Positions 45,490-49,626 of a stretch of DNA of 64,000 nucleotides are shown here, piece by piece. The stretch lies in NCBI GenBank assembly GCA_033442325.1, contig JAWQFM010000002.1:2320615-2384614 (forward strand). The letters are read 5' to 3'. The translations under genes were made by a program, and so were the position numbers. The notes under the pieces were generated by a model. It saw only the letters and a list, made by a program, of their open reading frames with translations. It had not been told where the DNA came from and ran no database searches. Every line of letters begins with the position of its first letter. Position 1 is the stretch's first letter. This DNA comes from Salpingoeca rosetta (taxonomy: Eukaryota; Protista; Choanoflagellata).

Positions 45490-45665
45490 ATGATGATGAA
45501 CAGCAGAGTTGGTGGTGGTGGTGGTGGTGGTGGTGGTGGTGGGAGAGTGCGCGTGAGTGCACTGCCGTTGCTGGCAGTGGTGGTGTTTGCAGTGTTGGCC
45601 ACAGTGGCGTGGGTGGGGGACAGCGTCTCTGTCACAGGAGGACCAAACCCAGACGGTTGGTGTAA

Positions 45666-45745
<80 letters not shown>

Positions 45746-47380
45746 CGCTGTGGTCGCTCCCACTGCACTCCTCTTGCCGCTCTCCTTGCCTTTACTGCAC
45801 TACACTCCTCTTGCCGCTCTCCTTGCCTGTACTGCAGGTACATGCTGAATCCTTCTCTCATACATGCTGTGAATCTTGTTGTGTGACCAACACAGCGACG
45901 CCCATCCCACTGTTCCAGGCATACACGAACGCGCTGCCAGAGGACCTCCTGGACATGCTCATGTGCGTATGATGGACCTGTGCTGCCTGTCGTCTTTGGG
46001 GTTGTCCACGGTGCCATTGGGGCTGACGAAGCTCTCCCCCCCCCCCCTCTCCACGGCTGTACTCACGCGTCCTGCTGTTGCTGTTCAGGGAGGATGCCTT
46101 GCTGTACGACAAGATGGCCAAGTCCGGTGGCAACCTCAAGTTTGGCAAGGTGGGTTAGCAGAGGGAAGAAATGTCGTTGGACGGTGTGTGTGTGTGTGCG
46201 TCTGAACTTGTATGTACCTGCATATACACATGCGTGTATGTGTGCGCATGCGATACCCCCTCACGACGTCCCCGACACACGCACACACGTTCACACACAC
46301 ATACACACACACACACACAAACAAACAAACAAACAAACACACAACTGTGTGCCATGTGCGGTGCGATAGCTGCCAACGACGTGGTATCCGCTGGTAGGCG
46401 ACGATTATCGGCCACCTCGCTTTGCGTCTGAGGTTGCCATCAGCTTCCTGCGTGACCTTGACTTCCCGGGCGACTTGCTGCACGAGCACGGCGTCATCGG
46501 TGCCGAGTGGTGTGTGTGTGTGTGTGTGTATTTGTATATGTATGCTTGTGTGCGTGTGTGTGCACATGTGCGTGTGTGCAACACTACTTGCCAGTCTTGG
46601 TCTTTGCCTCGTGGTGTTTGCTCAACCCTAATCCATCCCGCCATACCAATGGCACAGCATCAATCCATCACGCACACACACACACCCATACATCACACCC
46701 ACTCACTCGCTCACACATCACACATCACACCTGCAGGTGGTATCAGGTTCGGGACAGGGACGAGAACATTGGATTCCACTTTGACAAGGACGAGGCAGTC
46801 GCCTCACTGGAGATGCGGCTCTCTCATCCGGTCTTGTCCACCGTCACATACCTCTCCAACACGGGAGGACCAACCCTCATCTTCAACCAGGCAGGAAGCC
46901 ATGTAGCGCTGTGTGTGTGTGTGTGTGTGTGTGCGTGTGTGTGTGCGTGTGCGTGTGTGTGTGTGTGTGTGCGTGTGTGTGTGTGCGTGTGTGTGTGTGT
47001 GTGCGTGTGTGTGCGTGTGCGAGGAAGTGGGATGACTTGCTTTGCGGCTTACAGCGTCGCAGCTTTGCCGCTTTGTGCGTGTGCACTTGATCTTCCGGTG
47101 CATACTCACATCGCAATCACACACTCACACCCCATGATTCTTCAGTCGTCCATTGACGGCAACGACAACCAGCCCACAATACCAGAGCTTGGCGCGCTCT
47201 CCTTTCCCGCGCGCAACAAACACATCAACTTCCACGGAAATCTCTTGCATGGTGTCGTGGGTTCGCTCACAAACGCTCCCCAAGGTGTGCGTGTGTGTGT
47301 GTGTGTGTGTGCGTTGTGTGCGTGTACGTGTGCAGTGTTGTATGTACGTGTGCAGTGTTATGTGTGCGTGTTTGTTTGTC

Positions 47381-47414
<34 letters not shown>

Positions 47415-47717
47415 TGTATGTGTGTTTGTGCGTGTGCGAGCGTTGTGTTCACCAACCTATCCTCCCTGTTCCATTCTCTCTCAAGTGCTTACTTCCCCCA
47501 CACCTCCATTCGCAGGAGTGACACAACGAAGAGTCACGTTTCTTGTCAACTGGTGGAGCGTGAAAGGTTCGTTAATATCTGAAACAAGGCATGCATGCTT
47601 TGCAATGTACAATTCGCCTCTGAGAGGGGGGGGGGGTGGCGCTTCCTCTGCACTATTCAGCTGTCTTCGAAGCTCAGGCTCAAGCTCACGCACCTCTGTC
47701 TGCTGTCTGTTTCACTC

Positions 47718-47803
<86 letters not shown>

Positions 47804-48986
47804 ACACATACACACAAAAACGCACACACTCATACATACATACACACATACGCTCTCTCTTTTCTGCGCCCCACTTGTCCATCACCACCACCACCGCCAC
47901 CGCCACCACCAGCGCAACCGCCCAACTGCCAGCCGCTCTCGCGCGATCAAATCCGGCAGTTTGAAGAGATTTCACGTGGTGCCGTCGCGCTCATTGACCA
48001 GAAGGCATTCCATTCTGCCCACGTACGACGATAGCACGCTTCTCGTTTGCTTGCGTATTGTTGCGTTGTGGTATGGTGTGCACGTGCAGGTATTTCACTG
48101 TTCACACCATCGCTTTCACCAGCACACCTCAATCGTTCACGTGCCAACGCCACCCCATTTTTGCCATCACCACCACTACTGTCAGCCGTCGGCACTTGTT
48201 GACGTCACATCACCAGACGAAGCTGCGCAAATCAGCGACGATGAGTACTTCACCGTCACGCTCACCCCAGAGGAACGAACACACATCTGGTTCGTTGTTG
48301 AGAGAGGAAGGGAGTGCATATGTGTGCAACATTGCTCTTGGTGAGGGAATATCCTTGGTGCGTTGTGATGTGTGCATATCCGTCAAGGTGTTGTTGCTGG
48401 TGTGTTCATGGCCGCTGTTCTTTCAGTCCGCACTTGTGTGAGTCACACAAAGCACTGACTCGCCAACTCACGCGCACGTTGGTATTGCGTGTGTGTGTCC
48501 TTGTCACTCGTGCTGATGTAGGTGGAACCACTCCCTGCCCTCTGATGGGACGTATCAAATCCGCTGGAAGGGCGATGCGGTGAGCCCGTGTTCACTGCTC
48601 ACATGTGTGTTTGCTTGCTTGCTTGCCTGCAGGCACACGTACAAACAATGCTGTACCCCTTCTCTGTGTCTCACTCGATGATGTTTCTGCTGTGACATGC
48701 TGCGACCTCCACCGCGCTGCCCTTCAACCACGTTCATCACCACCCTCACCCGTCATCACCGTCACCACCACCATCATCCTGCCGACTAGTTGCTTGGCGG
48801 CGTGAGCGTGCTGGACTTGTACGAAGGCCCGTCTGTGCGCCGCGTGTTCTCAACGCCAAAGCCAAAGCTGTTTCTCTTCTATGATGAGAACAAGCACAAC
48901 TTGTGGGAGCTCGAGAAGTTGTTTCTCCCCGCCGTCAAGCCGCACGCCGACGCCTTTCTCATGTTCACCGCAGGTGTGTTGAGTGT

Positions 48987-49074
<88 letters not shown>

Positions 49075-49626
49075 TGAGTGTTTTGTGTGTGTGTGTGTGT
49101 GAAGGGGAATATCTGTGAGAGAATGTGTGCGAATGAATAAGGACAATCTCTGCGTGTGTGTGTGTGTGTGAATGTGCGTTAACTGTTGGGGGTTTCTTCA
49201 CTGCTTTAACCGTTCGTTTCGACCATGCATCCATGTGCAGAGCGCAAGAAGACAAAGGATGCCATGAACACGTTGGGAATTGTTGATGGGGATTTGCCAA
49301 CTGTCGCAATCCACGACACAACCGATGACAACAAGGCCGTCATGACAGGTGCGTGAGTGCGTGTGTGTGTGTGCGTGCGTGCGTGCGTGTGTGTGCGTGA
49401 GTGCGTGTGTGTGTGCTCTTTCTTGGAGAACGCCTCACGCCCGCGCGTCTGTGTGTGTGTGTGCGTGTGCATCAACAATGCAGGTATATTCTCGCGCGCA
49501 CGTGTGGAAGATTTCATTGCTCGGTTTAGGAAGCAGCACTCAAGCGAGCAGCAACAGGAACAGACACAAGACGATCAAGAGGAGAAGGAGGAGGAGAAGG
49601 AGGAGGACAAGTACCAAGACGAGTAG
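45490..49626 (+). CDS. Signal-anchored/secreted 2OG-Fe(II) oxygenase (prolyl-hydroxylase-like fold) with C-terminal non-catalytic thioredoxin-like (PDI b'-like) domain and acidic tail
   Basis: Hydrophobic N-terminus [19 protein letters not shown]. Catalytic core GAEW|[62 protein letters not shown] (HxD at ~46777, distal H at ~47248, 2OG-binding R at ~47530). C-terminal part [24 protein letters not shown]|[26 protein letters not shown]..|[30 protein letters not shown]. Confidence 0.85.

What the first reader, a model, noticed from the sequence alone, without database searches (positions are those of the whole stretch)
45490..49626. 2OG-Fe(II) oxygenase fused to a PDI b'-like domain and a PDI-like acidic tail
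Seen: after the catalytic core (..RVTFLVNWW), the last exons (~48790-49530) read [60 protein letters not shown] with no CxxC, followed by an E/D/K-rich tail ending YQDE*. Established: this pattern resembles the redox-inactive, substrate-binding b' domain of protein disulfide isomerase, and animal collagen prolyl 4-hydroxylase works as catalytic alpha subunits bound to PDI. Inference: a single-chain, convergent version of the oxygenase+PDI arrangement, in an oxygenase family (GAEWW..HxDKDE..STVxYL..GGPT..LLHGV..NWW) for which I know no characterised member.
Basis: partly seen in the sequence, partly recalled or inferred. Interest (0 to 1): 0.8.

Follow-up and report, generated by a model that had tools for sequence, protein, structure and literature searches.

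The report
Oxygenase fused to PDI-like domain
This is a real 13-exon gene for a secretory-pathway iron/2-oxoglutarate oxygenase with a redox-inactive, PDI b'-type thioredoxin domain built into the same chain. It belongs to a widespread protist family that nobody appears to have studied, and it echoes how animal collagen prolyl hydroxylase borrows PDI as a separate subunit.

Summary
Thirteen GT-AG exons (45490-49626, + strand) join in frame into a protein of about 498 aa. It has an N-terminal signal or anchor sequence, an HxD...H...RxT oxygenase core, a Cys-free C-terminal domain and an acidic tail ending YQDE.

Homologues carry both domains in one chain; one is a single intronless genomic ORF. 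The window protein matches family profiles for the N domain (E 1.8e-81) and the C domain (E 2.4e-30).

In homologues the C domain hits Pfam Thioredoxin_6 above threshold. An AlphaFold model (pLDDT 91.6) superposes on PDI b' domains (Z 16.2, 1.7 Å) and on PDILT b' (Z 15.2).

The N domain has no Pfam family, but it folds as a double-stranded beta-helix closest to PHD-type prolyl hydroxylases (Z about 13). The collagen P4H alpha subunit is more distant (Z 9.7).

Most full-length relatives end in KDEL-like signals. The window copy does not.

What is not shown:
- The enzyme's substrate.
- What the b' domain does. Several PDI pocket residues are replaced.
- That the exons form one transcript, by reads.

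I found no paper on this fusion. I rate it a new variant of a known kind, of moderately high interest.

The parts
45490..45655 (+). Exon 1. First ATG; (GGT)10 poly-Gly tract at 45511-45540; 19-20 residue hydrophobic segment [19 protein letters not shown] (45559-45615), which is a signal peptide or a type II signal anchor.
   Evidence: Homologues start with ordinary signal peptides.
45896..46509 (+). Exons 2-4 (45896-45962, 46089-46149, 46370-46509). N-terminal alpha/beta extension of the oxygenase domain, ending in GAEW|W.
   Evidence: In-frame GT-AG joins. Exon 4 aligns with P0044 and P0040 by tblastn.
46737..46902 (+). Exon 5. Iron ligands H159 and D161 (HFDKDE 46777-46794), STVTYL with the conserved Tyr, and GGPT.
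   Evidence: 63-69% identical to P0001-P0007. H, D, K, D, E, Y, G and T are invariant or nearly so in 58 sequences. The donor may be at 46890 (GC) instead of 46902.
47146..47284 (+). Exon 6. Third iron ligand H235 (LLHGV 47242-47256).
   Evidence: The His is nearly invariant and lies on a strand in the homologue model (E203-206).
47516..47566 (+). Exon 7. [10 protein letters not shown] (47527-47556); the second Arg is the likely partner of the 2OG C5 carboxylate, on the last core strand.
   Evidence: The Arg is nearly invariant (R223 of P0040) and starts strand E223-231 in the model.
47913..48579 (+). Exons 8-10 (47913-48022, 48186-48289, 48522-48579). Variable linker, then a beta-strand segment ([33 protein letters not shown]) leading into the thioredoxin fold.
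   Evidence: Alignment with the family. The family profile for this middle part does not reach significance on the window protein. The exon 9 boundaries are uncertain.
48790..49527 (+). Exons 11, 12 and the first part of 13 (48790-48973, 49241-49348, 49484-49527). PDI b'-type, Cys-free thioredoxin-fold domain, residues about 354-469.
   Evidence: Family C-domain profile 91 bits, E 2.4e-30. Exon 12 alone hits Thioredoxin_6 at E 0.027. The homologue model superposes on PDI b' at Z 16.2, rmsd 1.7 Å over 112 residues.
49528..49626 (+). Acidic Glu/Asp/Lys/Gln-rich tail ending KYQDE, then stop TAG (49624-49626). No KDEL-type ending.
   Evidence: About 29 of 52 relatives end in x[DE]EL-like tetrapeptides. 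A search for a downstream mini-exon that would add Leu gave one hit, no more than chance predicts (about 0.7 expected).

Best explanation
The locus is one gene encoding a secretory-pathway Fe(II)/2-oxoglutarate oxygenase of an undescribed family. Its catalytic double-stranded beta-helix is closest in shape to PHD-type prolyl hydroxylases. It is followed in the same polypeptide by a short beta-strand segment, a redox-inactive thioredoxin-fold domain homologous to the b' domain of protein disulfide isomerase, and an acidic tail.

Shown: the gene structure; the intact HxD...H iron triad with the conserved Arg and Tyr expected for 2OG binding; the b' fold; conservation of the two-domain chain in many eukaryotic relatives, which carry signal peptides and mostly KDEL-like endings.

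Inferred: the enzyme hydroxylates a residue, most likely proline, on proteins in the ER or early secretory pathway. The built-in b' module plays the role that separate PDI plays for collagen P4H, MTP and EDEM/Htm1: it holds the catalytic domain in a soluble, defined state and/or captures unfolded client chains. In this species the missing KDEL ending and the long N-terminal hydrophobic segment suggest retention by a membrane anchor, or onward transport.
For: Gene model: 13 exons, all GT-AG, one ORF. Homologues map collinearly onto exons 4, 5, 6, 7, 11 and 12. Full-length BLASTP of the spliced protein gives 39% identity to P0044 (E 1.6e-84) and 33% to P0040 over residues 27-477 (E 4.6e-83).

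Family: 3727 cluster representatives at E<=1e-3 and 332 at E<=1e-30. 65 of 159 fetched members carry both domains; most 'N-only' ones are truncated fragments. P0010 is a single intronless ORF on a genomic contig.

C domain: Thioredoxin_6 at 41.4 bits against a cut-off of 27 in P0040, and in 31 of 58 members. TIGR01130 ER_PDI_fam E 3.2e-10. The profile against PDB sequences hits only the b' part of PDI (E 2.3e-6), human PDI b'x 3bj5 (1.3e-5), PDILT b' (1.3e-5) and ERp27 (1.3e-4). AlphaFold model pLDDT 91.6, pTM 0.89. Superpositions: Z 16.2 on 3wt2, 15.4 on human PDI 3uem, 15.2 on PDILT. No CxxC in the thioredoxin-fold domain of any member listed.

N domain: all 50 best PDB matches are 2OG oxygenases. 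The top four are DdPhyA 13.0, Trichoplax PHD 12.9, P. putida PPHD 12.9 and PHD2 12.7. H, D, H, R and Y are conserved.

ER location: signal peptides and x[DE]EL-like endings in relatives.

Precedent: the PDI b' pocket holds Ile324 of the C-P4H catalytic domain, and the same pocket contacts the MTP alpha subunit (PMC9676403).
Against: No activity, substrate or localisation data exist. The fold ranking among 2OG oxygenases is shallow (Z 13.0 falling to about 11.8 for small-molecule enzymes), so 'prolyl hydroxylase' is a guess. Sequence identity to PHDs is only 10-14%. Several PDI b' pocket residues are not conserved (I291->A/T, I301->A, F304->A/T, I318->H/D; from the alignment and the residue list), so generic hydrophobic peptide binding may be lost. 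The structure was predicted for a 33%-identical homologue, not for the window protein, and I could not read the coordinates to inspect the domain interface. The window copy lacks a KDEL-type signal.
Confidence: 0.6

Rival explanations
1. The b' domain is purely an internal scaffold, a covalently attached 'beta subunit' that keeps the oxygenase domain soluble and supplies the tail and retention signal. It has no role in choosing substrates.
For: The high pTM (0.89) for a two-domain model suggests a fixed domain packing rather than a flexible arm. Canonical pocket residues are replaced by small or polar ones. In C-P4H and MTP the b' pocket is occupied by the partner subunit itself. In relatives the KDEL-like signal sits right after this domain.
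Against: The family keeps its own conserved polar motif at the pocket rim (I-H/D-D-T, and P-K before strand 2), which hints at a specific function. The domain interface could not be inspected.
Confidence: 0.3
2. The oxygenase acts on a non-protein substrate in the secretory pathway (a small molecule, lipid or glycan), and the resemblance to prolyl hydroxylases is only the shared fold.
For: Many small-molecule 2OG oxygenases (AsqJ, SnoK, proline hydroxylase H11, AviO1) score Z 11.5-11.8, within about 1.5 Z units of the PHDs. There is no sequence-level link to any characterised protein hydroxylase.
Against: The four best matches are all protein prolyl hydroxylases. The setting in the ER lumen next to a PDI-type peptide-binding fold fits protein substrates. 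ER 2OG oxygenases known from the literature (C-P4H, P3H, PLOD, AspH, P4H-TM) act on proteins; this last point is from my own knowledge.
Confidence: 0.15
3. Two neighbouring genes have been wrongly merged: an oxygenase gene ending near 47566-48579 and a separate small PDI-like gene at 48790-49626.
For: No reads could be laid. The middle part (exons 8-10) is poorly conserved, and its family profile does not score on the window protein.
Against: 65 relatives have both domains in one predicted chain, including an intronless genomic ORF and a 1.67-kb transcript-like contig. Exon phases match at every junction, and exon 11 has no start codon context: it opens with TTG right after an in-frame TAG that is part of the acceptor. 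The family alignment runs through the junctions of exons 9/10, 10/11, 11/12 and 12/13 without breaks. Probable RNA runs hold 0.29-0.36 of the sampled words, equal to the exon share of 0.35.
Confidence: 0.03
4. The oxygenase domain is a catalytically dead pseudo-enzyme kept as a binding module.
For: Nothing specific; it is listed for completeness because no activity data exist.
Against: The H, D, H, R and Y positions are intact in the window copy and invariant or nearly so in the 58-sequence alignments of the family.
Confidence: 0.03

Closest known systems
Animal collagen prolyl 4-hydroxylase, alpha2beta2, with PDI as the beta subunit (PDB 7zsc; PMC9676403)
   Same: An ER-luminal 2OG oxygenase domain associated with a PDI b' thioredoxin fold. 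An acidic tail, plus a KDEL-type signal in relatives, follows the PDI-like part. The PDI chain of 7zsc matches the C domain at Z 14.3.
   Different: Here the association is covalent and uses only a b'-type domain: there are no a, b or a' domains and no CGHC. There is no TPR peptide-substrate-binding domain and no dimerisation domain. The catalytic domain matches the C-P4H-II alpha subunit only at Z 9.7, against about 13 for PHDs. The 2OG partner is Arg rather than the Lys of C-P4H (the Lys is from my own knowledge). Several pocket residues that hold Ile324 of the alpha subunit are replaced.
PHD/EGLN-type prolyl hydroxylases (human PHD2, Trichoplax PHD, Dictyostelium PhyA, Pseudomonas putida PPHD)
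   Same: Best structural matches of the catalytic domain: Z 12.7-13.0 over 166-173 residues. They share the HxD...H...R arrangement.
   Different: Only 10-14% identity, with no sequence-level or Pfam match. Those enzymes are cytosolic or nuclear (bacterial, for PPHD) and have no thioredoxin-fold domain. This family has a His-to-Arg spacing of 17-19 residues containing an extra helix.
Redox-inactive PDI-family members with b' domains (PDILT, ERp27, ERp29/ERp44-type)
   Same: A Cys-free thioredoxin fold of b' type. PDILT b' matches at Z 15.2 with 26% identity, and ERp27 at Z 13.4. Profile E-values are 1.3e-5 and 1.3e-4.
   Different: Those proteins consist only of thioredoxin-fold domains and carry no enzyme domain.
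P4H-TM, the transmembrane ER prolyl 4-hydroxylase (PDB 6tp5)
   Same: A 2OG oxygenase in the ER lumen held by an N-terminal anchor, with an extra non-catalytic domain. This is a possible model for the window copy, which lacks a KDEL-type signal.
   Different: Its accessory domain is an EF-hand pair, not a thioredoxin fold. The catalytic domains match at only Z 10.2.
Bacterial cluster '2OG-FeII_Oxy_3 + 2OG-FeII_Oxy_4 + Thioredoxin (PF00085)', 380 aa, Pseudomonadota (ESM Atlas)
   Same: The nearest Atlas cluster by language-model features for both P0040 and P0001. It also joins a 2OG oxygenase to a thioredoxin-fold domain.
   Different: The score is only 0.77-0.78, which the tool rates as a lead only. 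It has a classical Thioredoxin family domain rather than Thioredoxin_6, and it is bacterial. I did not examine it further.

Membership tests
Fe(II)/2-oxoglutarate-dependent oxygenase superfamily (double-stranded beta-helix) | HxD/E...H iron-binding triad | tested here: met
   H159 and D161 (HFDKDE) and H235 (LLHGV) in the window protein. These positions are invariant or nearly so in the alignments.
Fe(II)/2-oxoglutarate-dependent oxygenase superfamily (double-stranded beta-helix) | Basic residue on the last core strand for the 2OG C5 carboxylate | tested here: met
   The Arg of RVTFLVNWW is conserved in at least 90% of 58 sequences and starts strand E223-231 of the model. Its contact with 2OG is inferred, not modelled.
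Fe(II)/2-oxoglutarate-dependent oxygenase superfamily (double-stranded beta-helix) | DSBH fold | tested here: met
   Shown for the homologue P0040 (33% identical, full length). The N-domain model has pLDDT 91.7, and all 50 best PDB matches are 2OG oxygenases at Z 9.2-13.0. The window protein itself could not be folded because the spliced sequence has no reference.
Fe(II)/2-oxoglutarate-dependent oxygenase superfamily (double-stranded beta-helix) | Match to a curated sequence model (Pfam 2OG-FeII_Oxy families) | tested here: not met
   No Pfam hit on the window ORF holding exons 5-7, nor on P0001-P0009. Only 2 of 58 members touch 2OG-FeII_Oxy_3, at E 0.0048.
PDI-family b' domain (Pfam Thioredoxin_6) | Match to Thioredoxin_6 above the gathering score | tested here: met
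   Met in homologues: P0040 41.4 bits, P0001 36.3 bits and P0006 35.5 bits against a cut-off of 27; 31 of 58 members hit. For the window, only exon 12 could be scanned alone (14.8 bits, E 0.027). The link to the family is E 2.4e-30.
PDI-family b' domain (Pfam Thioredoxin_6) | Thioredoxin fold superposing on solved b' domains | tested here: met
   Residues 323-443 of the P0040 model: Z 16.2, rmsd 1.7 Å over 112 residues on 3wt2; 15.4 on 3uem; 15.2 on 4nwy; 14.6 on 3bj5.
PDI-family b' domain (Pfam Thioredoxin_6) | No CxxC active site (redox-inactive) | tested here: met
   The window protein has no Cys after residue 269. No CxxC occurs in the C domain of 52 relatives.
PDI-family b' domain (Pfam Thioredoxin_6) | Hydrophobic ligand pocket (human PDI F249, L258, I289, I291, I301, F304, F305, I318) | tested here: inconclusive
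   Mapped through the HMM alignment to 3bj5 and the residue list in PMC9676403. In the window copy F249, L258 and I289 stay hydrophobic (F, F and M); F305 becomes L. The family consensus has F, L, Y and F at these four positions. I291->A/T, I301->A, F304->A/T and I318->H/D in both. This rests on the sequence alignment only; no coordinates were available.
Collagen prolyl 4-hydroxylase alpha subunit | N-terminal dimerisation and TPR peptide-substrate-binding domains; catalytic domain close to C-P4H/CrP4H | tested here: not met
   No Pfam match for these regions. Z is 9.7 to the 7zsc alpha chain and 10.1 to CrP4H, below the PHD-type matches. The protein is not a member.
PHD/EGLN-type prolyl hydroxylases | Sequence-level homology and a prolyl hydroxylase substrate | tested here: inconclusive
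   These are the top structural matches (Z 12.7-13.0), but identity is 10-14%, there is no profile hit in the PDB sequence search, and the lead over other subfamilies is only about 1 Z unit. The substrate cannot be tested with these tools.
Soluble ER residents retrieved by the KDEL receptor | C-terminal K/H/R-D/E-E-L type tetrapeptide | tested here: not met
   The window protein ends KYQDE*. About 29 of 52 relatives end in REEL, RDEL, DDEL, HTEL, KDEL and similar.

The most novel reading that the evidence does not exclude
The family is a previously unrecognised ER protein-hydroxylation system. Its oxygenase uses its own PDI b'-type domain to pick out unfolded or nascent secretory proteins, so hydroxylation would be coupled to folding state. 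This would be a single-chain counterpart, of independent origin, to the C-P4H/PDI, EDEM/PDI and UGGT logic. It is present in choanoflagellates and many other protists, and no animal member was identified here, though the taxa of most members could not be read.
Probability: 0.15. Interest if true: 0.85.

Novelty: new variant of a known kind. Interest (0 to 1): 0.6.

Why it matters
PDI is recruited as a non-covalent subunit by several ER enzymes: collagen P4H, MTP and the EDEM/Htm1 mannosidases. Why it is recruited is still debated (solubility, retention or client capture). A natural family in which only the b' domain is welded to a 2OG oxygenase isolates that question in one small soluble chain that can be expressed, truncated and crystallised.

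It also adds an uncharacterised clade of secretory-pathway 2OG oxygenases, with thousands of database members and no Pfam model, in a close unicellular relative of animals. That is relevant to how extracellular-matrix protein hydroxylation arose. Practically, the catalytic domain deserves a family model so that these genes stop being annotated as 'hypothetical protein'.

Tried and rejected
- **Read evidence.** The only later uses of the whole window file were local scripts in the closed sandbox (tblastn of proteins against the window file; regular-expression scans).
- **Spliced window protein.** It has no reference, so I did not paste it into Pfam, structure or database tools. I used exon references, local HMMs and the homologue P0040 instead.
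- **The window's own annotated protein.** It was not among the word-search hits at 267-849 aa, so I could not see how the public annotation models this locus.
- **PDB sequence search with the 9-sequence profile.** It gave only noise (mS23 at E 0.03). The 58-sequence profile was needed.
- **Genomic context.** The look-up of encoding contigs found nothing for P0040 or P0044. P0003 has no DNA held.
- **Bacterial relatives.** The scan of bacterial and archaeal genomes with the N-domain alignment found none, so operon context could not be used.
- **A hidden last mini-exon restoring ...DEL.** One candidate at 50533 without a pyrimidine tract, against about 0.7 expected by chance. Rejected.
- **Model A of exon 9 (donor at 48340).** Rejected in favour of 48289, because its 17 extra residues have no counterpart in any relative.
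- **Literature.** Five full-text searches found no description of the fusion.
- **Taxa of the relatives.** These could not be established. The tools give no organism for them, beyond Atlas hints of Chlorophyta, Myxococcota and phage clusters for the N domain alone.
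Full report
**1. What is in the sequence**

The stretch 45490-49626 lies in a eukaryotic genome with about 55% G+C, and most of the gene's introns hold a long (TG)n or (CA)n microsatellite. Reading the three forward frames, I could join 13 exons with canonical GT-AG introns. Their phases all agree, giving one ORF from the first ATG (45490) to TAG (49624-49626).

- The protein is 498 aa in my preferred model.
- The 515-aa alternative uses a later exon 9 donor and adds 17 residues that no relative has.
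- Three boundaries remain open: the exon 5 donor (46890 or 46902), the exon 9 acceptor (48091 or 48186) and the exon 9 donor.
- Earlier notes of this scan name the genome as the choanoflagellate Salpingoeca rosetta. I did not verify this.

**2. One gene or two?**

A word search with exon 5 found nine proteins of 396-542 aa that are 48-69% identical over that exon. Six of them already carry a precomputed Thioredoxin_6 domain at their C-terminus. I confirmed Thioredoxin_6 on seven of the nine, four of them above the gathering score.

An exhaustive profile search found 3727 cluster representatives at E<=1e-3 and 332 at E<=1e-30.

- Of the 159 fetched proteins that match the family's domain profiles, 65 have both the oxygenase and the thioredoxin-type domain.
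- The 'N-only' members that I looked at mostly end mid-domain, so they are fragments.
- The spliced window protein aligns end to end with full-length relatives: P0040 over residues 27-477 (E 4.6e-83); P0044 at 39% identity (E 1.6e-84).
- Relatives map collinearly on exons 4, 5, 6, 7, 11 and 12 by tblastn.
- One relative (P0010) is a single intronless 1515-bp ORF on a gene-dense genomic contig. Another sits alone on a 1.67-kb transcript-like contig.
- The family alignment runs unbroken across the exon 9/10, 10/11, 11/12 and 12/13 junctions.

The only hint from runs is that probable RNA runs hold 0.29-0.36 of the sampled words, which equals the exon share of 0.35. I take the single-gene reading as very likely, but not as directly shown.

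**3. The C-terminal domain**

Sequence evidence:

- Exon 12 alone touches Thioredoxin_6 at E 0.027.
- The spliced window protein scores 91 bits (E 2.4e-30, residues 354-469) against a profile of the family's C domain.
- That domain matches Thioredoxin_6 above Pfam's threshold in relatives: 41.4 bits against 27 in P0040, and 31 of 58 members hit.
- It matches NCBI's ER_PDI_fam model over its b' part, at E 3.2e-10.
- In the PDB sequence search it matches only the b' region of PDI-family proteins: a 507-residue PDI chain (29te_B) 2.3e-6, human PDI b'x 1.3e-5, PDILT b' 1.3e-5, ERp27 1.3e-4.

Structure evidence comes from an AlphaFold model of P0040 built on a 58-sequence alignment, with pLDDT 91.6 and pTM 0.89. 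Residues 323-443 of that model superpose on:

| Target | Z |
|---|---|
| b' of a fungal PDI (rmsd 1.7 Å, 112 residues) | 16.2 |
| Human PDI | 15.4 |
| PDILT b' (26% identity) | 15.2 |
| PDI chain of the C-P4H-II complex | 14.3 |

There is no CxxC in this domain in any member, and the window protein has no Cys after residue 269.

**4. Is the b' pocket kept?**

PMC9676403 lists the b' pocket residues of human PDI that hold Ile324 of the C-P4H catalytic domain. Mapping them through the HMM alignment to 3bj5 gives this picture:

| Human PDI residue | This family (consensus / window copy) |
|---|---|
| F249 | F / F |
| L258 | L / F |
| I289 | Y / M |
| F305 | F / L |
| I291 | A / T |
| I301 | A / A |
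| F304 | A / T |
| I318 | H or D (window H), within a conserved I-H/D-D-T motif |

The fold is b', but the classical greasy pocket is remodelled. Whether it still binds peptides, or packs on the oxygenase, cannot be decided without coordinates, which the tools do not expose.

**5. The N-terminal domain**

No Pfam, NCBIfam or PDB-sequence match exists. Only 2 of 58 members touch 2OG-FeII_Oxy_3, at E 0.0048.

The window protein scores 259 bits (E 1.8e-81) on the family profile. It keeps H159-x-D161, H235, the Arg of RVTFLVNWW and the Tyr of STVTYL. All are invariant or nearly so across the family, and in the model they lie on the expected strands.

A separate model of the domain (pLDDT 91.7) was aligned to 48,161 PDB representatives. 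All 50 best matches are 2OG oxygenases:

| Match | Z |
|---|---|
| Dictyostelium PhyA | 13.0 |
| Trichoplax PHD | 12.9 |
| P. putida PPHD | 12.9 |
| Human PHD2 | 12.7 |
| Viral collagen P4H | 11.6 |
| P4H-TM | 10.2 |
| Chlamydomonas P4H | 10.1 |
| Human C-P4H-II alpha | 9.7 |

Small-molecule oxygenases come within about 1-1.5 Z units of the top. The fold is therefore certain, while the substrate class is only suggested. The ESM Atlas independently places the domain next to clusters with 2OG-FeII_Oxy_3 and finds stand-alone look-alikes in Myxococcota, phages and green algae.

**6. Location**

Relatives start with ordinary signal peptides. About 29 of 52 end in REEL, RDEL, DDEL, HTEL, KDEL, KEEL and the like, often after an acidic run. 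The family is therefore ER-luminal by the usual sequence criteria.

The window copy differs. Its tail is acidic but ends KYQDE-stop, and a search for a hidden last exon gave only a chance-level hit. Its N-terminal hydrophobic stretch is 19-20 residues long, preceded by Arg residues and a (GGT)10-encoded poly-Gly tract. My inference is that this copy is held by a signal anchor, like P4H-TM or plant P4Hs, or travels further along the pathway.

**7. Mechanism, as far as it can be argued**

Shown: an intact 2OG oxygenase site and a b' fold in one secretory-pathway chain, conserved widely.

Inferred: the protein is a hydroxylase, with proline as the best guess from fold neighbours. Its b' module does covalently what PDI does non-covalently for C-P4H, MTP and EDEM/Htm1. 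The main rival is that the b' domain is only a scaffold. Lesser rivals are a non-protein substrate, a merged gene model and a dead enzyme. The oxygenase is not of the C-P4H type and the partner is a single domain, so 'independent, analogous solution' is a fair description. Functional equivalence is untested.

**8. Novelty**

Full-text searches for the combination found nothing. The pieces are known kinds. The fused architecture and the catalytic clade are undescribed as far as I could establish. The family is large, so this is not a curiosity of one genome. I rate it a new variant of a known kind, with interest 0.6.

- Local sandbox scripts did read the whole window file.
For that reason the spliced window protein itself was never submitted to Pfam, AlphaFold or the databases.

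Noticed in passing
window 41813-45381, minus strand: A divergent neighbour gene whose first exon starts at 45381, 108 bp from this gene's ATG. It opens with a signal-peptide-like MKGIAATLVAVVVGVLAVLCG. An internal exon (within 43722-44255) hits Pfam JmjC_2 at E 9.5e-5 and Cupin_8 at E 0.013. The pairing is not seen around the homologue in L001.
   Followed up: partly
window 46507-47961, plus strand: A 485-codon stop-free ORF runs through exons 5, 6 and 7 and the two introns between them, because the (TG)n-rich introns read as Cys-Val repeats without stops. ORF finders would report a false long protein here.
   Followed up: yes
window 45511-45540: A (GGT)10 microsatellite inside the coding region gives a run of 11 Gly in the n-region of the signal or anchor sequence. 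It is likely to be length-polymorphic.
   Followed up: no
window 42085-42184, 58259-58358, 60902-61001: Three 100-base runs of N (assembly gaps). The first lies inside the neighbouring JmjC-like gene.
   Followed up: no
protein P0045 (1071 aa): A close relative (37% identical to the window protein, the third closest by identity after P0069 and P0044) is predicted as a fusion of this family with a long coiled-coil protein, and it lacks the GAEWW segment. This is probably a merged or mis-spliced gene model in another organism. No matching coiled-coil gene lies downstream in this window.
   Followed up: partly
L001 4830-6344 (GCA_013565615.1 contig): The homologue P0010 is intronless in a compact gene-dense contig, between a PX/PAP-OAS1 gene and a CCDC148-like gene. 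Its cluster representative P0001 ends in DDEL. The organism was not identified.
   Followed up: no
ESM Atlas cluster seen: A bacterial (Pseudomonadota) cluster of about 380 aa combines 2OG-FeII_Oxy_3/_4 with a classical Thioredoxin (PF00085) domain. It may be an independent oxygenase-thioredoxin fusion worth its own look.
   Followed up: no
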